DNA of 64,000 bases, taken from assembly GCA_035221665.1 (NCBI GenBank), contig CM069160.1, forward strand, positions 7,688,001 through 7,752,000, given 5' to 3'. The stretch's first letter is position 1, and the number at the start of each line of letters is the position of its first letter. The notes beneath the pieces are model-generated. The model ran no database searches. It had not been told where the DNA came from and worked only from the letters and a program-made list of their open reading frames with translations. The position numbers and the translations under genes were made by a program. This stretch comes from Okamejei kenojei. Its lineage: Eukaryota. This document shows positions 3,601-62,660 of this stretch, one piece after another.

Positions 3601-6600
3601 TCCCCCCCCTCCCCCTCCCCTCCCCTCCCCTCCCGCTGCCCCCTCTCCCCTCCCTCTCCCCTCCCCCTCCCCCTCTCCCCGCTCTCCTCTACACCTCTCC
3701 CCACCCACCCTCACGCCTCTCCCTCCCTATCCGTCCCCCTCTCCCTCTCCCCTCCCCCCCTCTCCCTATACCCTCCCACTCCCCACTCCCCTCTCCCTCT
3801 CCCTCTCCCCCCCCCCCTCTCCTCTCCCCCTCTCCACTCCCCCACGCTACCAGGGGATTTCCACCGGTTTCACATTCGCTGCGAAGCTGCAGCGGGGCGG
3901 GGCTGCCAGCCGTGGCGCTGGCCAATGGAAGCAGAGCGCGGCTGTGAGTTAGTAGTTGCTTGGTAGAGCGAGGCTGTACAGGTTGAGTTTGTGTCTCTAA
4001 ATAACCCCGCCGCCGCTGTTGCTGTTGCTGCTGCCTAAACGCAGCGCGCACCCCTCCTATCCACCCCTCTCTCCCCTCCCCGATATACCGTATTTCCCGC
4101 CCCATGCCTTCGCTCTCCCTCTGCCCCTCACCAATTCTCCTCTCCCCACATCTCCCCCTCTCCTCTCCGGGAGGCTCCTCCCTCTACCCGCTCCACTCCC
4201 CCTCCCCCACTTTCCCCTCCCGCCCTCCGACTTCCGCCTCTCCTCTCCCCTCCCCCTCTCCTTCCCCCTCCTCCGCCTCCGCCTCTCCACTTCCCCATCC
4301 CCCTCCCCTTCCCCTTCCCCTCTGCCCCTCCCCTCTCTCCTTTCCTCTCCCCTTCCTACCCTCCACCTGTCTGCCCTCCCCGTCTCTAACCCCGCTCCAC
4401 CCTCCCCGTCTCTACCCCCCATCTCTCCCTCCCCACTCCTTCCCCCCTTTCCACCCCGTGCCTCCCCTCTCCCATCCTCTCCTCCCTCCGCTACACCCCA
4501 TCCCTCTCCCCATTCACCCCTCTCCTCGCGCCCCCTCCCCCCTTCCCCTCCCGCTCTACCTCCCCTCTCCCCTCCCTCTCTCCCGCTCTCCGTCCTACTC
4601 TCCCTCCCTTTCACCTCTCCCCTCCCCCCTCTACCTTCCCCTTCCCCCTTTCCTCCCCATCTCTCTCCCCTCTTCCTATTCCCCTCTCCTCCCCCACCTC
4701 TCTCCACTTATTTCCCCTTCCCCCTTCCCCCCTCTCCCCCGTCCCCCTCTCCCCCTCTCCCCCTCCCACCTTTCCACCCTCCTTTCCCCCTCTTCTACCA
4801 TCCCCCCCCCCGCCTCCCAGCTACCCCCCATCTCTCCTCCCTCCCCAATCCCTCCCCTCATCCTCCTCTTCGCCCTCCCTCTCCCTCCCCTCCCCTCTCT
4901 CACCGCCCCTGCCCTCCCCCTCTACCTCCCTCCGATCTCCTCCTCCTCCCCCTCCCCTCTACATCCCCTCCCTCCCCTCCCGCTCTTCCCGTCCCTCCTC
5001 CATTACGTCTCCCCCCTCCCATTCCCACTCTCTCCACTTACACTCTTCCCCCTCTCGCACCTGCCCCTCTCGTCCCTGCCCCTCTCGCCCCTCCCCCGTC
5101 TCCCGTACTCGTCACGCATTTCGTCCCTCTACCCTCTCCCCTCCCTAACCTCACCATCTTTCGCCCCTCCCCATCTCCCCCCTCCCACCTGCTTTCCCGC
5201 TCTTCCTCGCCCTCTCCCTCACCCTCGCCCCCATCTCTCCGTTGTCCCACAAGCTCCATGCCCTCTCCTCCTCCTCCTCTCATCACTCTCCCTCCCCCTC
5301 TCATCTTCCCCTCTCGCCCACCCTCACCCCCTCTCCCTCCCCCCCCCCTCTCCCTTAACCTTCTCTCCTCTACTCCTCCTCTCCCCTTCTCCACTCCCCC
5401 CCTCGTCTCCCACCCCTCCCATCCCACTCCTCTCGCTCTGCCCTCCCCCTCTCCATTCTCTCCCGCCTGCTCCCATCCGCTCTCCTCGCCGTCACCCTCC
5501 TCTCCCATCTTCCTCCCCATCTCACCCATCCCACTGGCCCCCCCTCCCCATGTCCTCTCCCTCCCTTCTCCCTTCACCCTCTCTCCGCTCCCTCTCCCAC
5601 TCTTCTCCCTCCCCTCCCCCCCTCTTTACCCGCGCTCACCCTCTCCTACCTCTCCACTCCTCCCCCTTCTCTCCCATTCCACACCGCTCCTTCCTTTCCC
5701 CTTCCCCTCAACCCTTTCCCTCTCTCCCCTCCCCCTCTCCTCTCCGCTCTACTCTCCCCTCCCCCCACTATCCCCCCTTCCCCTCCCCCCTCTCACTCCT
5801 CCCCCGCGCTCTCCCCCTCCCAGTAACCCCTCCACCGCTCCCCTCCATCTCCCTCCCCTCCCCCCACACTTCCCCTCACCCCCCTCTCCCCCCTCCCCCT
5901 CACCCTCCACTCACTCGCCCTCCCCTCCCTCCCTCTGCCCTCTCCATCTCCCACTCACCCCTCATCTCCCCTCTTCCCCTCGCCCAATCCTCTCACACCC
6001 TCCCTCCCCCCCTCCCGCCCCATCCCTCTCTCCCTCACCCTCTACCTCCCCCCTCTCTCCCCCCCGCGCCCCCCTCCTCTCTCCTCGCGCCTCTCTCTTC
6101 CCCCCCCACCTCTCTCCTCCCGCTCTCACCCCCTCTCGTTATCTCCCCCTCCCTCCTCCCCCCTCTCCCCACAACTCCCCTCCCGCCAGCTCCCCTCCCA
6201 CTCNNNNNNNNNNNNNNNNNNNNNNNNNNNNNNNNNNNNNNNNNNNNNNNNNNNNNNNNNNNNNNNNNNNNNNNNNNNNNNNNNNNNNNNNNNNNNNNNN
6301 NNNNNNNNNNNNNNNNNNNNNNNNNNNNNNNNNNNCTCCCACTCCCCTCCCACTTCCCTCCCACTCCCCTACCCCCCTCTCCTTTTCGCCTCCCCTCTCC
6401 CCTCCCCCCTCCACCCCCTCTCCCCTCTCCCCTTCCCTTCTCCACCTCGCTCCCCCTCTCCCCTCTCCCCCTTCCCCCTCCCCCTCCCCTCTCATCTCCC
6501 CTCCCCCTCTCCCCTCCCCCCTCTCCCTCTCCCTCTCCCCTCCCCCCCCCTCTCCCTCTCCCCCCCTTCCCCCTCCTCCCCTCCCCCTCCCCCCTCCCCT

Positions 6601-6689: not shown

Positions 6690-6821
6690 GGGGATTTCCA
6701 CCGGTTTCACCTTCGCTTCGAAGCTGCAGCGGGGCGCGACTGCCTGCCGTGGCTCTGGCCAATGGGAGCAGAGCGCGGCTGTGAGTCAGCAGTTGCTGGG
6801 TAGAGCGAGGCTGTACAGGTT
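6690..6821 (-). promoter_or_regulatory. Distal inverted S-X-Y module with ISRE-like and NF-kB sites (copy 2)
   Basis: Minus strand reads AACCT (6817-6821), 16 bp, CCCAGCAACTGCTG (X1, 6787-6800) overlapping TGACTCA (X2), 20 bp, CCCATTGG (Y, 6759-6766). GGTTTCACCTTC 6703-6714 and GGGGATTTCC 6690-6699 follow. Confidence 0.7.
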
Positions 6822-7057
6822 GAGTTTGTGTGTCTGGATAACCCCGCCCCCGCTGCTGCTACTGCTGCTGCTGCTGCCTAAAGGCAGCGCGCACCCCTTC
6901 TATTCAGTCCGCAGTGGACTGAATGCAGAACATGGACACCATAATCTGGAGGAGCAGCGGAACAGGCAGCATCTCTGGAGAAAAGGAATGGGTCCATTCC
7001 CGTGGGATGCTGCCTGTCCGTTTTTGTATCTATCTTCGGTTTAAACCAGCACCTTGG

Positions 7058-11795: not shown

Positions 11796-12959
11796 AGGCA
11801 CTCGAGTCCTGGCAACATCCTCGTAAATATTCAATGCACTCATTCCAGCTTAATAGCATCGCTCCTGTAGCAGGGCGACCAAAACAGAACACAATACTCC
11901 AAGTGTGGCCTCACCAACATCTTGCACAACTGCAACGTCATCTCCCAGTCTCCAAACTCAATACGCTGACTGATGAAGGCCATTCCACCAAGAACCTTCT
12001 TCACCAGCCTATCGACCAGTGACACCACATTGTTGACGGAGGTCACGGGGCTGTGGGGTTAAAGTGTAGATGTCACGGGCTGTCAGGTTTAATCTTTTTA
12101 CCTGGGACAGGATGTACCTATGACAGATTGATGGGCCGGTCCCAGGGATGGAGGATGTGCCAACGAGCTGCGACTGAGTCGACTGAGAGCGGAGTCTCCA
12201 GAGTTTGTGAGCATGAGAGGGAGGTGACTGACTCTTACACAAAGCCCACGGGGCTGGACAAACTGTGTTCCCCCGGCTGAGGGGTCTGTGGCCAGGGGTC
12301 AGTCTCCGATCAAGGGGAGAAATGTCCACACTGAGAGGGGGTGGAGAATGTTTATAATCCTCACCCACAGAGCACTGTGGAAGCTGCGTCACCGAGAGCA
12401 TTCAATGTTCCCGATGTATTAATGTTGTTCCCCACAGACCAGGGAAAGGGGCGTGGGGTTGTGGGGGAGGGCTGGGACAGGGAGCGGGAGGCAGGGGTGA
12501 GGACAAAGACGGTGAGAGGGAGGAGGAGGTTGGGATGAGGATCGGTGGGAGTGAGAGCTGGAACAGGCAAGGAGAGGGCTGGGCTAGTGCCGGGCATGGG
12601 TGGGGAGGAGGAGATGAGAGAAGGTGAGCAAGGGAATAATAGGAGGGTGGGAAGGTGTGGGGAGGGGGGGTTGTGAGGGATTTGTGAAGTGGGCGCTAAC
12701 GTAAGGGAGCGGATAGAGAAGGGGAGGAAGAGATTAGGAGGGTAGGAAGAGGTGTGGAGTAGGAGGAGGGGATTGGAAGTGATGGTGAGGGGAGGAGGAT
12801 GGGGAGGGGGTAATAGTGGGGAAGGGAGCCCATGGAAGGAAGCGTGGGGAAGGAGGGGACAGGTGCAATACCTGTGAGAGATTTGAATCACGGCACCCAG
12901 CTTCATTCCTGTGATTTATGTCGAAGGGCCTCAGTCCTGAAACGTTGCCTGTGTTTCTC

Positions 12960-13705
12960 TCTCCACAGATGGACAGTGAAGGTGATGTACAATGGGATCT
13001 TGATCACCTGGGACACTGGCGCCAAGGAATGGCAGGTGGAGTTTAATTACAATAAACTCGAGGTGTAGCAAGGTGGAGGGACGGGACTTACGCGTAAGTG
13101 CTGGAGCTGTGGGGCGTGTTGTGAGACTAGGAGACCTGGCGGGGAAGGGACATAGTTGCATGAAGGTGGCGACACAGGGTGACAGGGCGGTGAAGGAGGC
13201 GTGTGACATGCTTGCCTTCATCAGTGAAAGTGTTGACTACAGGTGTTGAGAAGTCATGTTCATAAATGAAAGGAGCGGAATCAGGCCATTCGGCCCATCA
13301 AGACTACTCCGCCACTCACTCACAGCTGCTTGGTAAGGCCGTGTTTACTGAACTCTGTGCAGCACCTGTTGTCCTGTCATTAAACTGGTAAAGGTGCAAC
13401 AATGTCTAAGATGCTACGTGGTCAGGAGGGTTTGAGCTATCGGGAGAGGCTGGATAGGCTGGGTCCTGAGTGTAGGGGGCTGGTCTTGTACAGAGTGGTG
13501 TATGCAACGAGCTGCTGGAGGAGGTAGTTGGGGCAGTTCCTATCACGACTTATGGAAACATTTAGACAGGCACATGTACAGGACAGAGTTAGAGGGATAT
13601 GGGCCAAACTCCAGCAGATGAGATTAGTGTCGAGGGGGCATGTTGGTCGGCGTGGGCAGGTTGGGCCAAAGGGCTTGTTTTCATGCTGCATGACTCTATG
13701 ACTCT
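12960..13705 (+). mobile_element. Degenerate CR1 fragment with 3' end
   Basis: WQVEFN and AFIS remnants; partial inverted copy at 63275-63610. Confidence 0.6.
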
Positions 13706-14310
13706 GAGGTTTATAAAACCATGGTGCAGAGTGCTGGTGTCAGCACGATGCTGTTACACTCCCGGGATTCCCCGGTCACCGTCCACAGTGCACAGTCCAA
13801 CCTCTCCCTGACCGCCGGCAGCCGCTTCCCACAAGCTCCGCCGTCAGCACGGACTGGCACGGATCCGTTCACTCCATCGTGAACCTCCCGGCCGCCTCTC
13901 CGGCCGAGGGAAGCGGAGAACATCACAGCTCCGTGTCCCAGGGTGGGGAATACAGACCGGGAACCTGTCACTTGCCGGCACCGACCTCACCCCATCACCG
14001 CGTTATACCGTGTAGGAAGGAACTGCAGATGCTGCTTTAAACTGAAGATAGACACAAAAACCTGCAGTAACTCAGCGGGTCAGACAGCATCTCTGGAGAG
14101 AAGGAATAGGTGATGTTTCGGGTCGAGACCCTTCTTCAGATGCTGTCTGACCCGATGAGTTACTCCAGGTTTTTGTGTCTATCCTCGTTGTTCTGGCTCT
14201 CTCCTCTCAAGCCCCGAGGCAGGGCCGCGACCCGAAACATGAAACATCCCTCTCCCTCCACAGATGCCACCCGACCCGTCAATGTGTTTCAACAGTCTGT
14301 TTCCTCTGCG

Positions 14311-15390
14311 TGTCTGTGTGTCAGGGTCTGTGTGTCAGGGTCTGTGTGTCAGGGTCTGTGTCTCAGTGTCTGTGTCTCAGGGTCTGTGTCTCAGGGTCTG
14401 TGTCAGGGTCTGTGTGTCAGAGTTTGTGTGTCAGGGTCTGTGTCGGGGTCTGTGGGTCAGGGTTTGTATTGGGGTCTGTGTGTCAGGGTCTGTGTGTCGG
14501 GGTCTGTGTGTCGGAGTCTGTGTGTCAGGGTCTGTGTCTCATGGTCTGTGTGTCAGGGTCTGTGTGTCAGGGTCTGTGTCTCAGGGTCTATGTCTCAGGA
14601 TCTACGTGTTAGGGTCTGTGTGTCAGGGTCTGTGTGTCAGGGTCTGTGTGTCAGGGACCTGTGTGTCAGGGACTGTGTGTCAGGGATCTGTGTCTCAGGG
14701 TCTATGTTTCAGGGTCTGTGTGTCAGGGTCTGTGTCAGGGTCTGTGTGTCAGGGTCTGTGTCAGGGTCTGTGTGTCAGGGTCTGTGTGTCAGGGTCTGTG
14801 TGTCAGGGTCTGTGTGGGGTCTGTGTGTCAGGGTCTGCGTGTCAGGGTCTGTGTCTCAGGGTCTATGTCTCAGGGTTTATGTGTTAGGGTCTGTGTCAGG
14901 GTCTGTGTCTCAGAGTCTGTGTGTCACGGTCTGTGTGTCAGGGTCTGTGTCAGGGTCTGTGTCAGGGTCTGTGTGTCAGGGTTTGATGTCAGGGTCTCTG
15001 TGTCAGGGTCTGTGTCAGGGTCTGTGTGTCAGGGTCTGTGTCAGGGTCTGTGTGTCAGGGTCTGTGTGGCAGGGTCTGTGTGTCAGGATCTGCGTGTCAG
15101 GGTCTGTGTCAGGGTCTCTGTGTCAGGGTCTGTCTGTCAGGGTCTGTGTCAGCGTCTGTGTGTCAGGGTCTGTCTCAGGGTCTGTGTCAGGGTATGTGTG
15201 TCAGGCTCTGTGTCAGGGTCTGTGTTTCAGGGTCTGTGTGTGAGGTCTGTGTGTCGAGGTCTGCGTCAGGGTCTGTGTGTCAGGATGTGTGTGTCATGGT
15301 CTGTATGTCAGGGTCTGTGTCATGGTCTGTGTGTCAGGGTCTGTGTGTCAGGGTCTGTGTGTCAGGGTCTGTGTGTCAGGGTCTGTGTCG
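14311..15390. repeat. Minisatellite (GTCAGGGTCTGTGT)n, 14/12-bp units
   Basis: Directly visible tandem array ending ~30 bp upstream of the promoter ISRE. Confidence 0.97.
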
Positions 15391-15418
15391 GTGGGCCCCA
15401 CCTCTCTCTCCCGCTTCA

Positions 15419-15720
15419 CACTTTCGGTTTCATGAGCTAACCTGCCACCGACCCTGACGCGCTGCTCTACCCGGCAACCGGTGACGCGGCGGCAGCTCTG
15501 CTGCTGATTGGACAGACTGGGATATTTTTTACCAACTTCACGGGGCTCTTCTGCCCGGAGACCGGTGACTCACGGGCGGGCAGGACTGTGATTGGCCGCG
15601 GACACGGCGCCGACCAATCAGCGCGGGGTGCGGGGGCGAAGGGGGCGGGCGAGCGGAGCAGAGTGAATGCGCATGCGCCCCGGACTCGCAAACTCACTTC
15701 AACCTGAACAGTCGGGGGCG
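15419..15720 (+). promoter_or_regulatory. MHC class I promoter: ISRE + two tandem S-X-Y modules + extra CCAAT, GC box and NRF1-like site
   Basis: CACTTTCGGTTTCA 15419-15432. X1 CCCGGCAACCGGTG 15470-15483 with X2 TGACGC, 20 bp, CTGATTGG 15504-15511. Second X1 CCCGGAGACCGGTG 15554-15567 with TGACTCA, 20 bp, GTGATTGG 15588-15595. CCAAT 15614, GGGGCGGG ~15642, TGCGCATGCG ~15668. CpG-rich, no TATA. Confidence 0.85.
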
Positions 15721-15723
15721 ACG

Positions 15724-15790
15724 ATGCTGCGCCCGCTGCTGCTGCCGCTGCTGCTGCTGCCCGCCCTCCTGGCTGGAGCCCAGGCTGCAG
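15724..15790 (+). CDS. MHC class I heavy chain exon 1 (signal peptide)
   Basis: MLRPLLLPLLLLPALLAGAQAA+G; phase-1 donor CAG/GTGGGT splices in frame to GSHSL of the alpha1 exon. Linkage across 13.5 kb is inferred from phase and the S-X-Y promoter. Confidence 0.88.
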
Positions 15791-15836
15791 GTGGGTGAGG
15801 GGCAGTGATGGGCTGCCAACCCAGTCCCCGACAGTG

Positions 15837-15942
15837 GCTGAGGGGCAGTGTGTGGGTGAGGGGCAGTGTGTGGGTGAGGGGCAGTGTGTGGGTGAGGGGC
15901 AGTGTGTGGGTGAGGGACAGTGTGTGTGCGAGGGGCAGTGTC
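15837..15942. repeat. 18-bp minisatellite (GTGAGGGGCAGTGTGTGG) x~5-6 in intron 1
   Basis: Visible tandem repeat; absent from the inverted copy. Confidence 0.9.
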
Positions 15943-16469
15943 GGGCTGGGCACCTTGTTCCGGTCAGGGAATGAGGGGGGTCAGTGGGCAGATGGGCACA
16001 GGGTTCACCAGTCAGTGGGTGAGGGTCAGTGTCGGGCTGGGCTCAGCATAATAACCCCTGGTACATTGAAACAGGGAGATCAGGCGGGTAAATAAGGGAG
16101 ATGAGGGATTTGGCAGATAAGTTAAAGGAGTATCCTGAGAGTGTCAACAAGTATGTAAAGAGTAAATGGGTAATTTTTGAGAGATTAGAACCCGTGCAGG
16201 ATGTGCGTGAATCCACAGGAGATTGGTGAGGTTGCATCTGTATTAACAGTACAGAAGGCCATAGAAGGCAAGAATTACAGGAAATGAACAGCCATTTCTT
16301 GGAATGAATCCTCATAAAAGAGGCGGTGCTGTAGAAACAAAGAACTGTAGACGCTGGCTGGTTATTACACAAGAGGACATAAAGTGCTGGAGTAACTCGG
16401 CAGGCCAGGCAGCATTACTGGAGAGTCTGAATAATGATATCAACCCAAAACGTCACCTATCGATGTTGT

Positions 16470-16497
16470 CTGAAGAAGGGTCTTGACTCGAAACGTT
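16470..16497 (+). ncRNA. Minimal hammerhead-ribozyme-like motif in a Penelope-type repeat
   Basis: CTGAAGA-A-GGGTC-TT-GACTC-GAAACGTT; inverted copy at 59542-59569. Confidence 0.5.
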
Positions 16498-16629
16498 AGC
16501 GATCCATATTCACCGGTGATGCTGCCTGATCCGCTGAGCTACTCCAGCACTTTGCATTCTTTATTTTTATGGCATATTAAGGTGGATAAGTACCTAAAGG
16601 CCGGTTCACATATATCCTTGTAAACTGGG

Positions 16630-17890
16630 AGGCGCATCGGTAGAGCTACTATCTTACAGAGGCCAGGGTTCAATCCTGACTACGGGTGCAATAACCATAT
16701 AACCATATAACATATAACCATATAACAATTACAGCACGGAAACGGGCCCTCCCGGCCCTTCCAGTCCGTGCCGACCATTTGTTTTCCCCTAGTCCCATCT
16801 ACCTGCACTCAGACCATACCCCTCCATTCCATTCACGTCCATATACCTATCCACTTTACTCTTAAATGTTAAAATCGATCCTGCCTCCACCACTTCTGCT
16901 GGAAGCTGATTCCACACAGCCACCACCCTCTGAGTAAAGAAGTTCCCCCTCACGTTACCCCGAAACCTCTGTCCCTTAATTCTCATGTCATGCCCTCTTG
17001 TTTGAATGTTCCCTACCCTCAATGGGAAAAACGTATCCACGTCAACTCTGTCTATCCCTTTCATAATTTTAAAGACCTCAATCAAGTCCCCCCTTAACCT
17101 CCTGCGCTCCAAAGAATAAAGACCTAACTTGTTCAACCTTTCTCTGTAACATAGTTGCTGGAATCCTGGCAACATTCTAGTAAATCTCCTCTGTACTCTC
17201 TCTATTTTGTTGACATCCTTCCTATAACTAGGCGACCAAAATTGTACACCATACTCCAGAATTGGTCTTACCAATGCCTTGTACAATTTTAACATTACTT
17301 CCCTACTCCTATATTCAATGCTCTGATTTATAAAGGCCAGCACACCAAAGGCTTTCTTTACCACCCTATCTACATGCGATTCCACCTTCAGGGAACTATG
17401 CACAGTTATTCCTAGATCCCTCTGTTCCACAGCATTCCTCAATTCCCTACCATTTACCATGTACGTCCTATTTTGATTCGTCCTGCCAAGATGTAGCACT
17501 TCACACTTATCAGCATTAAACTCCATCTGTCATCTTTCAGCCCACTTTTCCAAATGGCCCAAATCTCTCTGTAGACTTTGAAAATCTACTTCATTATCCA
17601 CAACACCACCTATCTTAGTATCATCTGCATACTTACTTATCCAATTTTCCACCCCAATGTGTACGGAGGTTATACGTTCTCCCTAAGACCGTGTGGGGTT
17701 TCTCCGATATCTTCGATTTCCTCTCACACTCTATAGTCGAATAGGTTTGTAGGTTAATTGGCTTAGTGTCAATGTAATTGTCCCTAGTGTTTAGGGATCG
17801 TGTGATTGAGCGGGGACCGTTGGTCTGTGCGCACTCGGTGGACTGAAGGGCCTATTTCAACGTGTATCTCTAAAATGATAAACTAAATTG
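16630..17890 (+). mobile_element. tRNA-derived SINE split by a CR1 insertion
   Basis: B box GGTTCAATCC ~16667; the uninterrupted version is at 59120-59410 on minus. Confidence 0.75.
16693..17654 (-). mobile_element. Young 5'-truncated CR1 LINE, present only in the left copy
   Basis: Open ORF2 C-terminus 16789-17526, (AACCATAT)n tail, CAAT duplicated at 16689-16692 and 17655-17658; empty site at ~59345-59352. Confidence 0.92.
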
Positions 17891-17998
17891 TGGGAAGCTA
17901 GGGCAGGAATTGCAGGGGCTCTGGCAGAATTATTTGCATTATCTATAGATACCAGTGAGCTACCAGAGACTGGAGGCGGTGATCGTTGTGTCCTTATT

Positions 17999-18580
17999 TA
18001 ATTAGAGCTGCAAGGACAGGTCAGGGCACAACAGGGCGGTTGCAGGGGGAGGTACCTGGGGAGGGGGTGGTCTGGGTGGGAAGGGATGAGTGAAGCAAGG
18101 AGTTGCAGAGGGAGTGGTCTGTGTGGAAGGCAGAGAGCAGAACTACAGGACACAGAGGAGATGTGGGTGAGGGATCCACCTATGGCAGCCGGGGGCAAAC
18201 ACGATTACATCTCGGATGACCTAGAATGGAAAGTCTCATCTTGGGACCAGATGAGGCAGAGGCAGAGACATTGGGAACAGGGAATAGCGTATTTGCAAAA
18301 GTCAGGGTGGGAGGAGGTGTAGTGGAGATAACTGTGTGAGTCGGTAGGTTTGCAGCAGACATCAGTCAATAGTCTGTCCCCAGTGTTGGAGACAGAGAGA
18401 TCACGAGAGGGGAGAGCGGCATCAGAGAAAGTCCAGGTAAATGTGAGGGCGGGGTGGGTTAGTGATGAAGTTAATTAAATCAATGAGTTCTGCACGGGAG
18501 CAGGAGGCGGCCCCGATGCAGTCGTTGATGTAGCAGAGAACGAGTTGTGGGAGGTGCCAGTGTACGATTGGAACAAGGAC
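17999..18580 (-). mobile_element. Penelope-like element RT/EN remnant
   Basis: PQLVLCYINDCIGAASC (YIDD-type motif); continues at 19901-20010 with MSTRMGPSCACLF. Inverted copy at ~58425-59005. Confidence 0.8.
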
Positions 18581-19900
18581 AAAATATTGATATTTACAAT
18601 ATATATTAACCATTTAGTTGAGGAAATTAAATGCAACATCTGCTAGTTTGTGGATGACACAAAGCTGGGTGGCAGTGTGAGCTGTGAGGAGGATGCTATG
18701 AGGCTGCAGGGTGACTTGGATAGGTTGGGTGAGTGGGCAGATGCTTGGCAGATGCAGTATAATGTGGATAAATGTGAGGTTATCTACTTTGTTGGCAAGA
18801 ACTGGAAATCAGATTATTGTCTGAATGTTGTCAGATTATGAAAAGAGGAGGTGCAACGAGACCCGGGGGTCCTTGTACATCAGTCGCAGAATGTAAGCAT
18901 GCAGGTACAGCAGGCAGTGAAGAAGTTGGCCTTCATTCCAAGAGGATTTGAGTTTTGGAGCAAGGAGGCCCTAATGCATTTGTACAGGGCCCTGATGAGA
19001 CCACACCTGGAGTATTGTGTGCAACTTTGGTCTCTTAATTTGAGGAAGGACATTCTTGCTATTGAGGGAGTGCTGTGTAGGTTCACCAGGTTAATTCCCG
19101 GGATGGCGGGACTGACATATGATGAAATAATTGGTCGATTGGGCCTATATTCACTGGAATTTAGGATGAGAGGAGATCTTATAGAAACATATACAATTCT
19201 TAAAGGATTGCACAGGATAGATTCAGGAAACATGTTCCCGCTGTTGGGTGAGTCCAGAACCAGGGGCCACAGTTTATGAAGGAACTTTTTCGGAGGGAGG
19301 AGGGGTAAATTGGAGGAGCAGCACCTCATATTTTGCTTGGGCAGTTTGCACCCCAGCGGTATGAACATTGACTTCTCTAATGTCAGGTAGTCCTTACTGT
19401 CTCCTCCCCTTCTCAGCTCCCCCTCAGCCCTCTGGCTCCACCTCTTCCTTTCTCCTCCCCCCCCCCAACCCCCCCCCCCCCCCAACCCCCCCCTCCCCCC
19501 CTCCCCCCCCCCCCTTACATCAGTTTGAAGAAGGGTTTCGGCCCGAAACGCTGCCTATTTCCTTCGTCCCATAGATGCTGCCTCCAGCAATTTTGTCTAG
19601 CCACAGTTTAAGAATAAGGAGTAGGCTATTTTGGACTGAGATGTGGAAAAACGTTTTCACCCAGAGAGTTGTGAATCTGTGGAATTCTCTACCACAGAAG
19701 GCAGTGGAGGTCAATTCACTGGATGTATTCAAGAGATAGTTAAATTTAGCTTTTGGGGATGAGGGAATCAAGGGATATGGGGAAAAAGCAGGAACGGGGT
19801 ACTGAATTTAGATGATCAGCCATGATCATATTGAATGACCGTGCTGGCTTGAAGGGACGAATGGCCTACTGCTGCACCATTTTTCATGTTTTCTATATTT
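18581..19900 (+). mobile_element. CR1 fragment inserted in a Penelope element
   Basis: TSD CAAGGAC at 18574-18580 and 19901-19907; DDTKLGG and RPHLEYCVQ peptides. Confidence 0.85.
19277..19599 (+). mobile_element. Penelope 3' fragment (EN C-terminus plus hammerhead-bearing repeat) inserted in the CR1
   Basis: KLEEQHLIFCLGSLHPSGMNIDFSN; TSD GCCACAGTTTA at 19266-19276 and 19600-19610. Confidence 0.8.
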
Positions 19901-27056: not shown

Positions 27057-28525
27057 TGGTGTGGTGTGTGTGTCCTCGGGTCTGTTGTTGGGGTGTGTTG
27101 TTGTGGGGGGATGTGTGTGCGTGTGTGATTGTGTGTGTGCGTCTCCCCCCATTTCTCCCCCCTTTCCCCCCCCACTACTTCTTCTTCTCTTATCCTCCCC
27201 CCGCCCCCTGTCTCTCTCCCCCTCTCTCTCGCCCCCTCCTCTCCTTTATCTCACCCACTCTCTCTCCCCCCTCTCTCCTCTTTCTCTCTCTCCAACGTCC
27301 CCCCATCATCTCAACTCTCTCCACGTTTTCCCACTCCAGCCCCGTTCTCACCCCACTATCCCCCATGACCCACCGCTGTCTCTCCCACCTTTTCTCCCCC
27401 TCTTCTCCCCCTCTCTCCCCCTCTCCCCCCCAATCTCCCCCAGTCTCTCTCTCCCCCATCCCTCCCTCCTCCACCTCCTCTCCCCCGTCCCCTGCCCATC
27501 CTCTTCTCCCCACCTCTACCCCCACCTTCTAACCAAGCCTCTCCCCTCCTTCCCCCACCTCTACCCCCTCTCCACCCTTTCCACCCTTTCTTCCCCTCTA
27601 GCAAGACTTTCTTCCCCCTCTCCCTCTCACCCCTCTCTTCTCCCCCTCTCTATCCGCCCCCTCTTCCTCCTTCTCTTCCCCTTCGCTCTCCATATCTCTC
27701 TTCACAACTACCCCCCCCCCCCTGAGCCCACCCCACTCACACCCCTTTCCCACCCTCCCTCCCCCCTCTCGCCTCCTCCCCTTCTGCAACTCTCTCTCCC
27801 CCCACTCGAATCTCCCCCTCTCTTTCCCCCCTCTCTTTCCCCCTCTCTCTTTCCCCCCTCTCTTTTCCCCCCTTCTTACTTTCCCCCTCTCTCTTTCCCC
27901 TTTTTCTCAACTCTTTCCCCCCCTCTCTCATCCCATCCTAATCCCCATCCTCTCTCCCTCTCACTCCTCCTCCCCCCTCTTCCTCTTCTCTCTCCCCCGC
28001 TCTCTCCTCCCCCCCTCTTTCTTCTCCCCCTATCTCTGTGTGTGTGAGGTGTGTATATGTAGGTTGTGCGGCGGTGTGTGGGTGTGGTGTGATTTTTTTT
28101 GTGTGTGTTAATATGTGGGGTGTGTGTTGTGAGGTCTGTGCGTGTGTGTTTGTGGGTGCGGGGGGGTTTGTGTGTGTTGGTGTGGGTGTGTGTGGGTGAG
28201 TGTGTGGGGGATGCGTGATGGGTGTGTGGGGAGGTGTGGGTAGGTTGTGTTGGTGGATGGGTGTGTGTAGGGCGTTGAGGTGGTGTGTTTGTTTTGTGTG
28301 TGGGTGGGTGTGTGTGAGTGTGTGTGTGTGTGTGTAGAGTGTGGTGTATGTGTTGGGGGGGGGTTTGTGGGTGGGAGGTGTGGGGTGGGGGTGTGTGTGG
28401 GTGTGGGTGTGTGGAAGTGTGTGTGTGTGTGTGGGGCGGGATGTGGGCATAATTGTGTGTGCATGCGTGTGTGTGCGTGCGGGTGTGTGAGTGCGTGCGT
28501 GTGGGTGTGTGTATGTGTGTGTGTG

Positions 28526-29169
28526 TATGAGATATGCGATATGCTCGAACAATCACTACTCAAGACTAAATCGTGGAAGCAAGAGATTCTTTATTTTCGA
28601 GTCCGCAGTCGGGCGCCTCTCCAAGTTGAGACACACCGAAGTCAGAAGGGTATAACCCCCTTTATAATACACACAATTCCTACATCCAACCTCCCCTCGG
28701 ACCCTTTTCCAATCAGAGTCTGAGGTGCACAATCTGTAGTACGTCCCCCCAGTACCTCCCACATCATACATCGCATGTCCAGACATGTGCATGGTAATGA
28801 ACAGTTACCCTTGACCATGGGTGTGTTGTAATATCCATTGAGATATTTTACTAAGCATGCTCAGAAATTGTTCATGACCTACCCTAGTTTTACTCACCTC
28901 ACCTCCAACTGAACTCTCTCAGTTCTCCTATATCAGCACTAAAGCTAAGCTATAGTGACAAGGGTCCCATCTATCACTCCCTTCTACTGATAGGGATCTA
29001 TCTACATCACTCCCTTGTACCGCTATGCAATGCTATCACTTCTTACTCAAGGACTGCTCTGGTAACTTTTATACACAGCTGTGTCAGAACCCTCTTCCTG
29101 GCCTCTATCGGTTTGAATCCTCATTAAAGTCCCTTACAATAGTGGGGTTTAATCACTTTATCCCTCACA
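28526..29169 (-). mobile_element. Probable solo LTR in intron 1
   Basis: Right end CCTCACA is complementary to TGTGAGG, which starts the related copy at 63664. TATAAA and AATAAA occur in LTR order on minus. Confidence 0.65.
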
Positions 29170-29261
29170 TGTGTGTGTGTGTGTGGGTGTGTGTGTGTGG
29201 GGGTGTGTGGGGTGTGGGCCTGTGTATCTCCCGCTGTCTCTGACTCCGTGCCCGGTTCCAG

Positions 29262-29522
29262 GCTCCCACTCGCTGCATTATTTCGCCACGGGGGTGGCCC
29301 CGGGCTGGGGGGTCCCTGAGTTCACGGTGGTCGGATACGTGGACGAGGAGCAGATTGGTCACTACGACAGCGACAGAGGGGACGTGGAGCCGCGGCAGCG
29401 GTGGATGGCGAAGAGTCAGTTCGCCGACTACTGGGAGCAGGAGACACAGAGGGCGCGGGGCTACGAACCGTGGTTCACGGCCAACATCCAGACCATGCAG
29501 CAGCGAACCAACCAGAGCGGGG
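29262..29522 (+). CDS. MHC class I heavy chain exon 2 (alpha1 domain)
   Basis: GSHSLHYFATGVAPGWGVPEFTVVGYVDEEQIGHYDSDRGDVEPRQRWMAKSQFADYWEQETQRARGYEPWFTANIQTMQQRTNQSG; TTCCAG acceptor, GTGAGA donor, 261 nt, phase 1/1; Y7, Y59, R84 and N86-Q-S equivalents present. Confidence 0.97.
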
Positions 29523-29649: not shown

Positions 29650-29929
29650 GGATCCACCACTATCCAGTGATGTTTGGCTGTGAGCTGCTGCGCTCGGACG
29701 GCTCCACCACCGGGTTCAATCGCAGTTTCGGCTGGGAGCGGAGAGGTACTTGATCAGCTCTCGACAAGGAGCACAATGAGTGGTGACGCCCGTCTCCAAA
29801 CATGGGTTGTTGACCAAACACAAGTGGAGCGGGACACCGCAACGCCCATACTTGGAAGGACTAACCTGAGGAAGAGTGCATCGAGTGGCTGCAAAATTTG
29901 TCCCACCGGACAGAGTCAACTCACCCCCT
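29650..29929 (+). CDS. MHC class I exon 3 (alpha2 domain), frameshifted as assembled
   Basis: TTGCAG acceptor; GIH..VMFGCEL.RSDGSTTGF, DKEH, VTPV, LTKHKW (TKHKW 29813-29827), EEECIEWLQ and GQSQLTP in shifting frames; GTGAGT donor at 29930. Confidence 0.9.
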
Positions 29930-36893: not shown

Positions 36894-37393
36894 NNNNNNN
36901 NNNNNNNNNNNNNNNNNNNNNNNNNNNNNNNNNNNNNNNNNNNNNNNNNNNNNNNNNNNNNNNNNNNNNNNNNNNNNNNNNNNNNNNNNNNNNNNNNNNN
37001 NNNNNNNNNNNNNNNNNNNNNNNNNNNNNNNNNNNNNNNNNNNNNNNNNNNNNNNNNNNNNNNNNNNNNNNNNNNNNNNNNNNNNNNNNNNNNNNNNNNN
37101 NNNNNNNNNNNNNNNNNNNNNNNNNNNNNNNNNNNNNNNNNNNNNNNNNNNNNNNNNNNNNNNNNNNNNNNNNNNNNNNNNNNNNNNNNNNNNNNNNNNN
37201 NNNNNNNNNNNNNNNNNNNNNNNNNNNNNNNNNNNNNNNNNNNNNNNNNNNNNNNNNNNNNNNNNNNNNNNNNNNNNNNNNNNNNNNNNNNNNNNNNNNN
37301 NNNNNNNNNNNNNNNNNNNNNNNNNNNNNNNNNNNNNNNNNNNNNNNNNNNNNNNNNNNNNNNNNNNNNNNNNNNNNNNNNNNNNNNNNNNNN
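36894..37393. other. 500-N scaffold gap
   Basis: Exactly 500 N, a round placeholder length, separating the two oppositely oriented arms. Confidence 0.95.
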
Positions 37394-59410: not shown

Positions 59411-60068
59411 CCAGTTTACAAGGATATATGTGAACCGGCCTTTAGGTATTTATCCACCTTAACATGCCATAAAAATAAAGAATGCAAAGTGCTGGAGTAG
59501 CTCAGCGGATCAGGCAGCATCACCGGTGAATATGGATCGCTAACGTTTCGATTCAAGACCCTTCTTCAGACAACATCGATACGTGACGTTTTGGATTGAG
59601 ATCATTCTTCAGACTCTCCAGAAGCTGCCTGACCTGCCGAGTTACTCCAGCACTTTATGTCCTCTTGTGTAATAACCAACCAGCATCTGCAGTTCTTTGT
59701 TTCTACAGCACCGCCTCTTTTATAATGTGGATTCATTCCAAGAAATGGCTGTTCATTTCCTGTAATTCTTGGCTTCTATGGCCTTCTGTACTGTAAATAC
59801 AGATGCAACCTCACCAATCTCCTGTGGATTCACACACATCCTGCACGGATTCTAATATCTCAAAAATTACCCATTTGCTCTTTACATACTTGTTGACACT
59901 CTCAGGATACGCCTTTAACTTATCTGCCAAATCCCTCATCTCCCTTATTTACCCGCCTGATCTCCCTGTTTCAATGTACCAGGAGTTATTATGCTGAGCC
60001 CAGCCCGACATTGCCCATCAGCCACTGTCGGGGACTGGGTTGGCAGCCCATCACTGCCCCTCACCCAC

Positions 60069-60110
60069 CTGCAGCCTGGGCTCCAGCCAGGAGGGCGAGC
60101 AGCCCCCGAC
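60069..60110 (-). pseudogene. MHC class I paralog exon 1 remnant lacking the ATG
   Basis: Minus strand GTCGGGGGC|TGCTCGCCCTCCTGGCTGGAGCCCAGGCTGCAG/GTGGGT; 38 bp including the ATG are missing relative to 15711-15790. Confidence 0.88.
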
Positions 60111-60391
60111 TGTTCAGGTTGCGGTGAGTTTGCGAGTCCGGGGCGCATGCGCATTCAGTCTGCTCCGCTCGCCCGCCCCTTTCGCCCCCGCACCCCGCGC
60201 TGATTGGTCGGCGCCGTGTCCGCGGCCAATCACAGTCCTGCCCGCCCGTGAGTCACCGGTCTCCGGGCAGAAGAGCCCCGTGAACTGATAAAAAATATCC
60301 CAGTCTGTCCAATCAGCAGCAGAGCTGCCGCCGCGTCACCGGTTGCCGGGTAGAGGAGAGCGCGGCAGGTTAGCTCATGAAACCGAAAGTG
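60111..60391 (-). promoter_or_regulatory. Paralogous MHC class I promoter (ISRE + both X-Y modules retained)
   Basis: TGAAACCGAAAGTG 60378-60391; S 60367-60371, 16 bp, X1 60337-60350, 20 bp, Y 60309-60316; second X-Y at ~60226-60267. Confidence 0.85.
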
Positions 60392-60419
60392 TGAAGCGGG
60401 AGAGAGAGGTGGGGCCCAC

Positions 60420-62660
60420 CGACAGACACAGGCCTGACACACAGACCCTGACACACAGACCCTGACACACAGACCGTGACACAAAATCAGACCGTGACAC
60501 AGACCTGACACACAGACCCCGACCACAGACCCCTGACACACAGACCGTGAGACCCTGACACAGACCCGAACACAGACCCCGAGACGACCACTGACCCTGA
60601 CACACAGACGTGACACACAGACCCTGACTGACCCTGACACAGACCCTGACACAGACCCTGACACACAGACCCTGACACACAGACCTGACACAGACCCTGA
60701 CACAGACCCTGACACACAGACCCTGACACACAGACCCCGACACACAGACCCCGACACACAGACCCCGACACACAGACCCTGACACACAGACACCTGAGAC
60801 ACAGACACACAGACCCTGACAACACACAGACCGTGACACAGGACCCTGGCACACAGACCCTGACACACAGACCTGAAACACAGGACCCTGACACACAGAC
60901 CCTGACACAGACCCTGGACACACAGACCTGAGACACACAGACCCTGATACAGACACACACAGACCCAGACACCAGACCCGACCACAGACCTGACACACAG
61001 ACCTGACCACAGACTACAGACACACCACAGAACTGGCACAGACCCTGACACACAGACCCCGACACACCCTGCCCGGACACACAGACTCTGAGACACAGAC
61101 CCTGACACACAGACCCGACACACAGACCCTGACACACAGACATAGACCTGACACTTCTGGCACTGACCCTGAGACACAGACCTGACACACAGACCCTGAC
61201 ACAGACCCTGACACACGGGACCCTACCCTGACACACACACAAAGACCCCGCACACAGACCCCGACACACAACACAGACCCTGACACACAGACCCTGACAC
61301 ACAGACCCCGACACACAGACCCCGAGACACACACGACCCTGAGACCCCGACACACAGACCCTGACACACAGACCGTGACACAGAGAGACACCTTGACAAC
61401 AGACACAGACCATGACACACAGACCCTGACACACAGACCGTGACACAGACCCTGACATTCACAGACCCTGACACACAGACCTGAACATCAATGACACACT
61501 GACACACAGACCTGACACACAGGACCCTGAGACACAGACCCAGACCCTGATACACACTGGCAGACCCTGACACCACAGACCCCGACACAGACCCTGACAA
61601 CACAGACCCTACACAGACCACAAGACCCTGACACACAGACCTGACACACAGACCCTTGACACAGACCTGACACAAACCTGAGACACAGACCCTGACCTGA
61701 CCACAGACCTGGACACACAGACACCATAGACCCTGAACACAGACTGACAACACAGACCAGACACAGACCCCGAACAGACACACAGTCCCTGACGCCGTGA
61801 CAGACCCCGACCCTGCACACAGACCCTGAGACCCCCGACACACAGACCCCGACACACAGACCCCGACACACAGAATCCTGACACAGACCCCGACACACGG
61901 GCCCCGACACACGACCCCGACACACAGACCCTGACACACAGACCGTGACACAGACCCTGACATCAAACCGTGACACACAGACCCTGACAACAGACCATGA
62001 CACACAGACCCTGACACACAGACCGTGACCCGACCCTGACATCAAAACCCAGACACACAGACCCTGACACAACAACCCTGATACAGACTCTGCAACACAG
62101 ACCTGACACACAGACCATAACACACAGACCTGAGACCATAGACCCCTACACACATGACCGTGAACACACGACCCTAACACACAGACCCTGACAAACACAG
62201 ACCCTGACACACAACCCTGACACACAGACTCTAGACACAGACCCTGACACACAGACCCAGTGACAAACCCAGACACACAGCCCTTTCACCACAGAGACCC
62301 TGACACACATGACCCCTGAGACAGACCCTGACACACTGACCCTGATAACCAGAGCACCCTGACACACAGACTCCTGAGGACACAGACCCTGACACACAGT
62401 CCCTGGACACAGACCGTGAGGACACAGACCCTGTACACACAGACTCCGACACAACAGACCCACACACACAGACCCCAGTACAGACCCTAGACCCACAGAC
62501 AGACACGACACAGACCAGACACACAGACTCTGACACACCAGACCCTGACAACAGACCCTGAGACACAGACCCTGACACACAGACCCTGACACACAGACCA
62601 TGATGACAGACCCTGACACACAGAACCCTGACACAACAGACCCTGACACACAGACCCAGC
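60420..62660. repeat. Inverted copy of the 14-bp minisatellite (ACACAGACCCTGAC)n
   Basis: About 2.2 kb versus about 1.1 kb in the left copy; more irregular. Confidence 0.95.

What the first reader, a model, noticed from the sequence alone, without database searches (positions are those of the whole stretch)
15419..15595. Class I promoter with two tandem S-X-Y modules 84 bp apart
Seen: X1 14-mers at 15470 and 15554 (12/14 identical), each overlapping an X2 site (TGACGC; TGACTCA) and each exactly 20 bp from a Y box. The 84-bp offset equals 8 turns at 10.5 bp. The sequence between the boxes is dissimilar, so this looks like an old, selectively retained duplication. Established: mammalian class I, class II and b2m proximal promoters typically have one such module. 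Inference: a double enhanceosome platform, possibly with different X2 partners (CREB vs AP-1) or different use of NLRC5 and CIITA.
Basis: partly seen in the sequence, partly recalled or inferred. Interest (0 to 1): 0.8.

Follow-up and report, generated by a model that had tools for sequence, protein, structure and literature searches.

The report
Doubled MHC switch, skate class I promoter
The control region in front of a skate MHC class I gene copy carries the classic vertebrate MHC "S-X-Y" switch twice in a row, a real and old internal duplication, but the gene behind it is broken here and nobody has tested whether the second switch works.

Summary
Two X1/X2/Y units lie at 15470-15511 and 15554-15595, 84 bp apart. 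They share 20 of 22 box bases and the same X-to-Y spacing; shuffles of the window give no such match. They sit in a CpG island, behind an ISRE and in front of a CCAAT box, GC boxes and a signal-peptide exon (ATG 15724). That exon is in phase with an MHC class I alpha1 exon 13.5 kb downstream.

Module 1 aligns without gaps with the mouse H2-K and H2-Eb SXY regions, so it is a true MHC-type module. Module 2 is a diverged tandem copy with intact X1, X2 (a perfect AP-1 site) and Y, but only a weak S box.

Both modules recur in an inverted paralogous copy in this window and in contigs of three other organisms. Sequence changes avoid the boxes (P about 0.02).

- The "exact 8 helical turns" is not conserved: 83 bp in the paralogue, and 1-2 extra bases in relatives.
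- The focal copy has a 10-base insertion between S and X1.
- The gene here looks like a pseudogene: alpha2 has two stop codons and frameshifts, and no alpha3 was found.

No RNA, factor-binding or deep cross-species data could be obtained. The scan has flagged other duplicated SXY cassettes in this genome before, on other DNA. Verdict: a new variant of a known promoter type, function untested.

The parts
15420..15432 (+). ISRE (ACTTTCGGTTTCA; reverse complement GAAACCGAAAGT)
   Evidence: Sequence. Lies 17 nt before the S core, against 16 nt in the mouse H2-K primer sequence printed in PMC4374748.
15437..15444 (+). S box core of module 1 (CTAACCTG)
   Evidence: 8/8 identical to the S region of mouse H2-K. 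The same core (TCAACCTG) lies 23 nt before X1 in the distal cassettes at about 6820 and about 3985.
15447..15457 (+). About 10-nt insertion between S and X1, specific to this copy
   Evidence: Absent from copy B and from the high-depth contig of run X7. With it the S-core-to-X1 distance is 33 nt; without it, 23 nt as in mouse.
15470..15488 (+). Module 1 X box: X1 CCCGGCAACCGGTG (15470-83) overlapping X2 TGACGCG (15482-88)
   Evidence: The X region with its 5' flank matches mouse H2-Eb at 15/20, counted from the printed alignment, and the X-Y half matches H2-K at 26/44 ungapped, p<0.002.
15504..15511 (+). Module 1 Y box (CTGATTGG, inverted CCAAT)
   Evidence: Starts 20 nt after the end of X1. 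ATTGG lies 23 nt after X1, as in mouse H2-K.
15532..15539 (+). Degenerate S-like box of module 2 (CCAACTTC)
   Evidence: 5/8 to the module 1 S core. Lies 22 nt before X1'. Aligned by the unit 1/unit 2 global alignment.
15554..15572 (+). Module 2 X box: X1' CCCGGAGACCGGTG (15554-67) overlapping X2' TGACTCA (15566-72, perfect AP-1/TRE)
   Evidence: X1' with its 5' flank (CTTCTG.CCGGA.AC) matches mouse H2-K X1 at 16/21.
15588..15595 (+). Module 2 Y box (GTGATTGG)
   Evidence: Starts 20 nt after the end of X1'. One contig of run X9 carries G>C at 15594.
15614..15621 (+). Forward CCAAT box (CCAATCAG), 18 nt after Y'
   Evidence: Sequence.
15630..15678 (+). Two GC boxes (15630-38, 15641-49) and the palindrome GCGCATGCGC (15669-78), inside a CpG island
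   Evidence: Sequence. CpG observed/expected is 1.02 over 15400-15725, against 0.16-0.33 in the flanks.
15724..15790 (+). Leader (signal peptide) exon, MLRPLLLPLLLLPALLAGAQAA plus 1 nt; GT donor at 15791
   Evidence: Phase 1, fitting the alpha1 exon. Leader style as in shark and ray class I proteins.
29262..29522 (+). MHC class I alpha1 exon, intact
   Evidence: Pfam MHC_I, E=2.5e-22. 71% identical to a Leucoraja erinacea class I-like protein.
29650..29929 (+). alpha2 exon, defective: 280 nt (not a multiple of 3), TGA at 29751-53 and 29784-86, two reading-frame switches
60030..60420 (-). Inverted paralogous copy B of the promoter (module 1 at 60309-60350, module 2 at 60226-60267). It lacks the 10-nt insertion and lacks 38 nt including the ATG.
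   Evidence: Part of an inverted segmental duplication, 12947-18924 against 58078-63628.

Best explanation
This is the CpG-island proximal promoter of a skate (batoid) MHC class I gene copy.

Shown:
- The order of elements is ISRE, S, X1/X2, Y (module 1), then a second diverged S'-X1'/X2'-Y' unit 84 bp downstream (module 2). After that come a forward CCAAT box, GC boxes, the 5'UTR and the leader exon.
- Module 1 is a genuine MHC enhanceosome platform. Its box order and spacings match mouse class I and class II promoters base for base.
- Module 2 arose by an old internal tandem duplication of the whole S-X-Y unit of about 65-85 bp. Sequence between the boxes has drifted to near random. X1, X2, Y and the exact X-to-Y distance are kept.
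- The duplication predates the local inverted segmental duplication and is present in other organisms' DNA.

Inferred:
- Both units can load RFX on X1, a bZIP factor on X2 (CREB/ATF at TGACGCG, AP-1 at TGACTCA) and NF-Y on Y.
- Module 1, with the ISRE and a class I-type S box, is the main NLRC5-type platform.
- Module 2, with Y' and the CCAAT box next to the core promoter, is an auxiliary platform that adds RFX/NF-Y occupancy and AP-1 input.

At this particular locus the downstream gene is decayed, so the arrangement matters as a feature of the promoter family rather than of this gene.
For: - Motifs, spacing and chance controls.
- Class I identity: the leader is in phase with an alpha1 exon (Pfam MHC_I, E=2.5e-22), and the nearest proteins are skate, ray and shark class I.
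- Register with mouse:
  - The H2-K X-Y half aligns ungapped with module 1 at 26/44 (p<0.002). The second-best position is module 2, at 23/44.
  - The ISRE-S-X1 half aligns ungapped with the short-form copy B at 29/57 (H2-K, p=0.004) and 32/56 (H2-Eb, p=0.002).
  - Distance from the end of X1 to ATTGG is 23 nt in mouse, module 1 and module 2.
  - Distance from the S core to X1 is 23 nt in mouse, copy B and the distal cassettes, and 22 nt for S'.
- Published constraints (PMC4374748; PMC4243378): X-Y 20-22 bp, S-X 16 bp, module span 59-68 bp, within 300 bp of the TSS. Module 2 spans 64 bp, and module 1 spans 65 bp in copy B.
- Retention:
  - Copy B has both modules unchanged while the flanks differ.
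  - A single contig of run X9 spans 15458-15593 with no gaps, and runs X7 and X16 cover both modules.
  - Only 3 of 30 variant events fall in the 27% of the promoter that is boxes (P=0.02).
  - Module 2 has fewer events per base (0.062) than module 1 (0.133).
- CpG observed/expected is 1.02 in the promoter, against 0.16-0.33 in the flanks.
Against: - There is no binding, chromatin, transcript or TSS evidence. No listed run holding the stretch is RNA, and three RNA-labelled runs of the source species hold none of its words.
- S' is only 5/8 like S. In mouse the S box is essential for NLRC5 (PMC4374748).
- X1' departs from the RGYAAC half-site at two positions.
- Against mouse H2-K alone, module 2 is not significant: 23/44 against a shuffle maximum of 25.
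- The focal copy has +10 nt between S and X1, giving a module 1 span of 75 bp, outside 59-68.
- The organisms compared are coded and probably close relatives. The variant list was truncated (38 rows not shown). The conservation test is therefore weak.
- The gene is defective at this locus, and copy B lacks the ATG. Selection on these two copies themselves is doubtful.
Confidence: 0.55

Rival explanations
1. Only module 1 is an MHC enhanceosome platform. Module 2 is a neutral leftover of the tandem duplication. Its Y' box, together with the CCAAT box 18 nt downstream and the TGACTCA site, works at most as an ordinary NF-Y/AP-1 core-promoter element, without RFX or NLRC5/CIITA.
For: - S' is degenerate, 5/8.
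- X1' has GGAGAC instead of the GGCAAC half-site (needed 2 mismatches).
- Module 2 against mouse H2-K is within the shuffle range.
- Paired CCAAT boxes and AP-1 sites are common in CpG-island promoters (general knowledge).
Against: - X1' with its flank is as close to mouse H2-K X1 (16/21) as module 1 is to H2-Eb (15/20).
- The exact 20-nt X1-Y distance is kept even though the spacer sequence has changed, possibly through compensating indels.
- Module 2 shows fewer variants than module 1 among paralogues and relatives.
Confidence: 0.3
2. The whole promoter at this locus is dead DNA. It is a relic in front of a class I pseudogene inside a recent inverted segmental duplication, and neither module does anything here. 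Box conservation only reflects the youth of the copies.
For: - alpha2 has two TGA codons, two frame switches and a length of 280 nt.
- No alpha3, TM or tail exon was found on either strand.
- Copy B lacks the ATG.
- No RNA holder was found.
- Copies A and B are 93-96% alike over about 6 kb.
- Earlier notes report many locally duplicated SXY cassettes in this genome.
Against: - CpG observed/expected of 1.02 is kept in the promoter while the flanks are CpG-depleted. That is unusual for a long-silenced, methylated relic.
- alpha3 could lie in the assembly gaps (30403-30548, 36894-37393).
- This rival does not touch the age and structure of the duplication, which must have arisen in a working ancestor promoter.
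Confidence: 0.35
3. The two units are not related by duplication. They are independent or chance occurrences of X-like and CCAAT motifs in a GC-rich promoter.
For: Ungapped identity outside the boxes is near random. CCAAT and TGAC motifs are short.
Against: - 20/22 box bases are shared at identical spacing, with 0 expected in shuffles.
- The flank 5' of X1 is also shared (6/10).
- Whole-unit gapped alignment gives p<0.0005.
- The best self-offset is exactly 84.
Confidence: 0.04

Closest known systems
Mammalian MHC class I proximal promoter (mouse H2-K, HLA-A/B): ISRE, S-X1-X2-Y, CCAAT, core promoter, driven by RFX, CREB/ATF1, NF-Y and NLRC5
   Same: - Same order of elements.
- ISRE-to-S distance is 17 against 16 nt.
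- S core CTAACCTG is identical.
- S-to-X1 distance is 23 nt in the short form.
- Distance from the end of X1 to ATTGG is 23 nt.
- X2 is TGACGCG.
- A CAGCTCT heptamer sits at the same place in the X2-Y spacer.
- A CCAAT box follows Y.
   Different: - The S-X-Y unit is present twice in tandem.
- No Enhancer A/kB site lies next to the ISRE (a minisatellite abuts it).
- No TATA box; instead a CpG island with GC boxes.
- The focal copy has +10 nt between S and X1.
- Factor binding is untested in any cartilaginous fish.
Distal SXY (S'-Y') enhancer modules of the human MHC class II region
   Same: These are extra copies of the SXY platform, besides the proximal one, that recruit the same enhanceosome (PMC4243378).
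   Different: Those lie kilobases away and act as distal enhancers. Here the second unit is 84 bp away, inside the proximal promoter, between module 1 and the CCAAT box.
H2-T10/H2-T22 promoters with displaced S- and Y-like motifs (Ludigs et al. 2015)
   Same: They are NLRC5-occupied class I-type promoters. Their Y lies 48 bp downstream of the X box, and an S-like motif containing a Y sequence lies 45 bp upstream of it. This shows that irregular or repeated box layouts exist.
   Different: There is no complete second X1/X2/Y unit with canonical spacing in them.
Motif duplications in cetacean MHC class II promoters (T-box, 11-22 bp; PMC6155461)
   Same: Lineage-specific tandem duplication of a regulatory motif inside an otherwise rigid MHC promoter.
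   Different: Those duplications are short, young and cover a single motif. Here a whole S-X-Y unit was duplicated long ago.
Single S-X1-X2-Y cassettes elsewhere in this window and genome (6740-6830 and 3900-3990, minus strand; earlier notes s1-880402, s1-880459)
   Same: - Homologous to module 1 (local alignment score 40).
- Same S core and the same 23/23 spacing.
- X2 is TGACTCA, as in module 2.
   Different: - One unit only.
- Followed, not preceded, by ISRE-like and kB sites.
- No recognisable gene attached.

Membership tests
MHC SXY enhanceosome module | X1 box (RFX site) directly overlapping an X2 box (CRE/TRE-like) | tested here: met
   - Module 1: CCCGGCAACCGGTG plus TGACGCG.
- Module 2: CCCGGAGACCGGTG plus TGACTCA.
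- Each pair overlaps by 2 nt.
- With its 5' flank, the X region of module 1 matches mouse H2-Eb at 15/20, and that of module 2 matches H2-K at 16/21.
MHC SXY enhanceosome module | Y box (inverted CCAAT) at a fixed distance from X (20-22 bp; PMC4374748) | tested here: met
   - 20 nt from the end of X1 to the start of the Y box in both modules.
- ATTGG lies 23 nt after X1, the same as in the mouse H2-K primer sequence.
- Relatives show 21 and 22 nt in module 1.
MHC SXY enhanceosome module | S box at a fixed distance (about 16 bp) upstream of X | tested here: inconclusive
   - Module 1: S core CTAACCTG is 8/8 to H2-K. Its start lies 33 nt before X1 in the focal copy, against 23 nt in copy B, the distal cassettes and mouse.
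- Module 2: CCAACTTC (5/8), 22 nt before X1'.
MHC SXY enhanceosome module | Whole module spans 59-68 bp and lies within about 300 bp of the TSS (PMC4243378) | tested here: inconclusive
   - Spans: module 2 is 64 bp; module 1 is 65 bp in copy B but 75 bp in the focal copy.
- Both X boxes lie 170-254 nt upstream of the ATG.
- The TSS is unknown because no RNA data were available.
MHC SXY enhanceosome module | Cooperative binding of RFX5/RFXAP/RFXANK, CREB/ATF1 and NF-Y, and recruitment of NLRC5 or CIITA | not testable with these tools
   Needs EMSA, ChIP or reporter assays in skate or heterologous cells.
Class I-type (NLRC5-type) promoter | ISRE immediately upstream of the SXY module, and a gene product that is MHC class I | tested here: met
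   - The ISRE lies 17 nt before the S core, against 16 nt in H2-K.
- The leader exon is in phase with an alpha1 exon that matches Pfam MHC_I at E=2.5e-22.
Functional MHC class I gene | Open alpha1, alpha2 and alpha3, TM and tail exons | tested here: not met
   - alpha1 is intact.
- alpha2 has TGA at 29751-53 and 29784-86, two frame switches and a length of 280 nt.
- No alpha3, TM or tail was found by tblastn or motif scan on either strand.
- Assembly gaps could hide exons.

The most novel reading that the evidence does not exclude
The tandem double S-X-Y could be a conserved, selected feature of batoid (perhaps elasmobranch) class I promoters, including the working classical genes. The two platforms would then be sub-specialised:
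- Module 1 has a class II-like X box (GCAAC), a CRE and a class I-type S box next to the ISRE.
- Module 2 has a class I-like X box (GGAGAC, compare H2-K GGACAC) and a perfect AP-1 site next to the CCAAT box.

That would be a two-enhanceosome promoter integrating interferon/NLRC5 and AP-1 inputs. It might be a living trace of the divergence of NLRC5-type and CIITA-type modules from one ancestral unit.
Probability: 0.2. Interest if true: 0.7.

Novelty: new variant of a known kind. Interest (0 to 1): 0.45.

Why it matters
The SXY module is one of the most rigidly constrained promoter architectures in vertebrates, and almost nothing is published on it in cartilaginous fish, the oldest lineage with an MHC.

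This locus shows two things:
- The ISRE-S-X1-X2-Y register of mouse class I and class II promoters is already present, nearly base for base, in a skate.
- The whole unit can be duplicated in tandem inside a proximal promoter and keep its boxes and spacing.

If the second unit is functional in working class I genes, it would be the first natural two-platform MHC promoter. It would also be a handle on how NLRC5- and CIITA-type modules diverged. If it is not functional, it is a neat example of motif turnover in a multigene family.

The test is simple: promoter alignments across elasmobranchs, and reporter deletions.

Tried and rejected
**Fetching orthologous promoters**
- A scan of metagenome contigs for the X1-X2-Y composite gave 0 hits.

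**RNA evidence**
- No listed run holding the stretch is RNA. RNA-labelled runs of the source species hold none of its words.
- Reads were laid on DNA contigs of four other organisms. TSS and splicing therefore remain unknown.

**Earlier notes**
- Search by sequence gave nothing.

**Literature**
- No paper in the library describes elasmobranch class I promoters or tandem SXY modules.

**Ideas rejected**
- The 84-bp duplication as an assembly artefact: the units are only about 50% identical.
- 'Exact 8 helical turns' as a conserved constraint: the offset is 83 in copy B and 85-86 in relatives.
- A nearer leader exon for alpha1: none was seen in 28500-29260.
- A kB/Enhancer A site next to the ISRE: none is there, and a 14-bp minisatellite abuts it.

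**Limits on what was done**
- The spliced protein was not joined. alpha1 was searched alone, and alpha2 was read frame by frame.
- N runs were left as they are.
- The mouse SXY sequences used are the four primers printed in PMC4374748. They were compared one by one and not joined.

Full report
**What is in the sequence**

Reading 15380-15830 gives, on the + strand:
- A 14-bp minisatellite ending at 15388.
- An ISRE, ACTTTCGGTTTCA (15420-15432).
- CTAACCTG (15437-15444).
- X1 CCCGGCAACCGGTG (15470-15483), overlapped by X2 TGACGCG (15482-15488).
- Y CTGATTGG (15504-15511).
- CCAACTTC (15532-15539).
- X1' CCCGGAGACCGGTG (15554-15567), overlapped by X2' TGACTCA (15566-15572).
- Y' GTGATTGG (15588-15595).
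- A forward CCAATCAG (15614-15621).
- Two GC boxes (15630-38 and 15641-49).
- GCGCATGCGC (15669-78).
- An ATG at 15724, opening a 22-codon hydrophobic leader that ends in phase 1 at 15790, before a GT.

**Is it more than chance?**

- A composite pattern of 22 specified bases, allowing 3 mismatches, finds only these two units and their two inverted paralogues in 64 kb. None is expected in 100 dinucleotide shuffles.
- A looser pattern based on the RFX half-site also finds them. It additionally finds two single modules on the minus strand at 3922-3960 and 6759-6797.
- Among all self-offsets from 15 to 200, offset 84 gives the best ungapped segment (20/25, p=0.009).
- A gapped global alignment of unit 1 against unit 2 lies about 4 sd above shuffles (0 of 2000).
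- Ungapped identity is high in X1 (12/14), Y (7/8) and the flank before X1 (6/10). It is random in the X2-Y spacer (5/15) and after Y (1/12).
- With gaps, the spacers share GGCGGCAG against GGCGGGCAG, with indels that cancel out. The total X-Y length is therefore unchanged.

The two units are homologous, old, and keep box sequence and spacing.

**Which gene does it serve?**

- The leader exon is in phase with an exon at 29262-29522 that encodes (G)SHSLHYF...NQSG. Pfam calls it MHC_I with E=2.5e-22.
- A full HMMER scan gives cartilaginous-fish class I proteins as best hits. The closest is a Leucoraja erinacea class I-like protein (71%). Hypanus, Mobula, Triakis and Chiloscyllium class I proteins follow.
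- The genome is therefore a batoid, most likely a skate. Earlier notes of the scan say the same.
- The leader resembles the leaders of those proteins.
- Intron 1 would be 13.5 kb and is full of LINE-type reverse-transcriptase fragments.
- I searched alpha1 alone and did not join exons.
- The next exon (29650-29929) starts as a normal alpha2 (GIHHYPVMFGCELL...). It then carries TGA at 29751-53 and 29784-86 and switches frame twice. Homology runs DKEHNEW, then VTPVSKHGLLTKHKW in another frame, then back for ECIEWL. Its length is 280 nt, not a multiple of three.
- No alpha3, transmembrane or tail exon is found on either strand, by tblastn with six elasmobranch class I proteins or by Ig C1-set motifs.
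- Assembly gaps (N runs, left untouched) could hide exons, but the alpha2 lesions stand.
- At this locus the class I gene looks like a pseudogene or a fragment.

**A second copy in the window**

- The region 12947-18924 is repeated in inverted orientation at 58078-63628, at 93-96% identity.
- The promoter copy B at 60030-60420 (minus strand) has both modules identical to copy A.
- Copy B differs elsewhere:
  - A 10-nt stretch between S and X1 is absent.
  - There are two substitutions and a 1-nt deletion between the modules, so its offset is 83.
  - There are single changes near the GC boxes and in the 5'UTR.
  - A 38-nt deletion removes the ATG.

**Comparison with the mammalian module**

Ludigs et al. 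2015 (PMC4374748) print the primers that carry the mouse H2-K (class I) and H2-Eb (class II) SXY regions. I compared each primer separately, ungapped, with the skate promoter.
- The H2-K X-Y half matches module 1 at 26/44 (p<0.002). This includes TGACGCG, a shared CAGCTCT at the same spacer position, and ATTGG. The second-best position is module 2 (23/44).
- The H2-K ISRE-S-X1 half aligns in register with copy B (29/57, p=0.004), with CTAACCTG matched 8/8.
- The H2-Eb S-X1 half aligns with copy B at 32/56 (p=0.002).
- Neither ISRE-S-X1 half aligns in register with copy A, because of its 10-nt insertion.

| Distance | Mouse H2-K | Skate |
|---|---|---|
| ISRE to S core | 16 nt | 17 nt |
| S core to X1 | 23 nt | 23 (copy B, distal cassettes), 33 (copy A), 22 (S' to X1') |
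| End of X1 to ATTGG | 23 nt | 23 (module 1), 23 (module 2) |

These fit the published constraints:
- S-X 16 bp and X-Y 20-22 bp.
- Span 59-68 bp, within 300 bp of the TSS.
- Module 2 spans 64 bp. Module 1 spans 65 bp in copy B and 75 bp in copy A.

Module 1 is therefore a genuine MHC-type S-X-Y module with its ISRE. Module 2 is a second unit with good X and Y boxes and a poor S box.

One detail deserves a test but carries little weight, because it rests on two mouse sequences:
- The X box of module 1 resembles the class II X box (CTCTA.C..GCAAC.G.TGA, 15/20 to H2-Eb).
- The X box of module 2 resembles the class I X box (CTTCTG.CCGGA.AC, 16/21 to H2-K).
- The mouse paper found X boxes interchangeable and the S box decisive.

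**Retention in other DNA**

- The stretch is held in part by runs of several coded organisms. No listed holder is RNA.
- I laid contigs of four runs from four other organisms on 15389-16330 at 80% likeness.
- Three of the four runs (X7, X9, X16) cover both modules. X13 has no depth before about 15611.
- One 179-nt contig of run X9 spans 15458-15593 with six substitutions and no gap. The two units therefore sit at the same offset in that organism.
- Listed differences cluster in three areas:
  - the S-X interval (15447-15464, including the same 9+1-nt deletion as copy B);
  - the X2-Y spacer of module 1 (15488-15504, including +1 and +2 nt, giving X-Y distances of 21 and 22 and offsets of 85-86);
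  - downstream of 15596.
- No listed difference touches X1, X2, X1' or X2'. Three touch the other boxes: 15420 (first base of the ISRE), 15504 (first base of Y) and 15594 (core of Y', one contig).
- Pooling these with the copy A/B differences, 3 of 30 events fall in the 27% of the promoter occupied by boxes (binomial P=0.02).
- Module 2 has 0.062 events per base, against 0.133 for module 1 and 0.116 downstream.
- This is suggestive, not strong. The organisms are coded and probably close, the variant table was truncated, and the events are not all independent.
- Summed depths of hundreds to thousands, and 185-389 laid contigs, indicate a multi-copy family in those genomes. Depth is not a copy number.

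**Other features**

- CpG observed/expected is 1.02 over 15400-15725, against 0.16-0.33 in the flanks. That is the signature of a promoter kept unmethylated in the germ line, now or until recently.
- The single cassettes at about 6740-6830 and about 3900-3990 (minus strand) are complete S-X1-X2-Y units with the same 23/23 spacing. They are closer to module 1 (score 40) than module 2 is (29), and they carry TGACTCA like module 2.
- Module 2 is therefore the most diverged member, and TGACTCA is a normal X2 variant in this family.

**Interpretation**

Shown:
- This is a class I-type ISRE-SXY promoter with a second, old tandem copy of the SXY unit.
- Box sequences and X-Y spacing are retained in both copies.
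- The arrangement is shared by a paralogue and by other organisms' DNA.

Inferred:
- Both units load RFX, a bZIP factor and NF-Y.
- Module 1 is the main NLRC5-type platform.
- Module 2 is an auxiliary platform with AP-1 input next to the CCAAT box.

Not supported:
- A conserved, exact 8-turn phasing.
- A good S box in module 2.
- A working gene at this locus.

Untested:
- Any binding or transcription.

No paper in the library describes such a tandem SXY. The nearest precedents are:
- distal SXY enhancers in the class II region;
- the irregular H2-T10/T22 promoters;
- short motif duplications in cetacean class II promoters.

The scan had already noted several locally duplicated SXY cassettes on other DNA of this genome. 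None of those is described as two units in tandem inside a proximal promoter.

**Verdict**

This is a real feature and a new variant of a known promoter type. Interest is moderate (0.45). It would rise if working class I genes of elasmobranchs share the double module.

Noticed in passing
window 6740-6830 (-) and 3900-3990 (-): Two complete single S-X1-X2-Y cassettes: S core TCAACCTG, X1 CCCAGCAACTGCTG, X2 TGACTCA, Y CCCATTGG, with the canonical 23/23 spacing. By my hand count the X box is 17/20 identical to mouse class II H2-Eb. Each is followed by an ISRE-like site (GAAGCGAAGGTGAAACC) and a kB site (GGAAATCCCC), then a long purine tract. The copy at 3900-3990 has three box mutations (TAACTCA and others). 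No gene is attached.
   Followed up: partly
window 12947-18924 vs 58078-63628: Inverted segmental duplication of about 6 kb, 93-96% identical. It carries the minisatellite, the promoter, the leader exon and the start of intron 1. The two leaders point towards each other. It could also be an assembly artefact of a haplotype, which was not tested.
   Followed up: partly
window 15447-15457: A 10-nt insertion (about one helical turn) between the S box and X1, in the focal copy only. Copy B and the dominant contig of run X7 have the mouse-like 23-nt S-to-X1 distance.
   Followed up: yes
window 15688-15712: The 5'UTR segment CAAACTCACTTCAACCTGAACAG contains a third S-like core (TCAACCTG, 15699-15706). 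It closely resembles the S-box region of the distal cassettes (ACAAACTCAACCTGTACAG). Run X16 has an 8-nt tandem duplication (CAAACTCA) here. It may be a remnant of a further unit, or part of the initiator region.
   Followed up: no
window 29650-29929: The class I alpha2 exon is broken: TGA at 29751-53 and 29784-86, two frame switches, and a length of 280 nt. The closest database protein, a Leucoraja erinacea model of 233 aa, is likewise alpha1 plus a partial alpha2 only.
   Followed up: yes
window 14312-15388 and 60433-62657: Long 14-bp minisatellites (GTCTGTGTGTCAGG; 80 and 161 copies) directly abut the promoter upstream in both copies. A shorter 15-17-bp array lies in intron 1 at 15837-15932 and draws very high contig depth in other organisms' runs.
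   Followed up: no
window 15741-15772: In all four runs laid, contig depth drops sharply over the CTG-repeat part of the leader exon. Either most family members have a different or shorter leader (as copy B does), or the aligner skipped the repeat.
   Followed up: no
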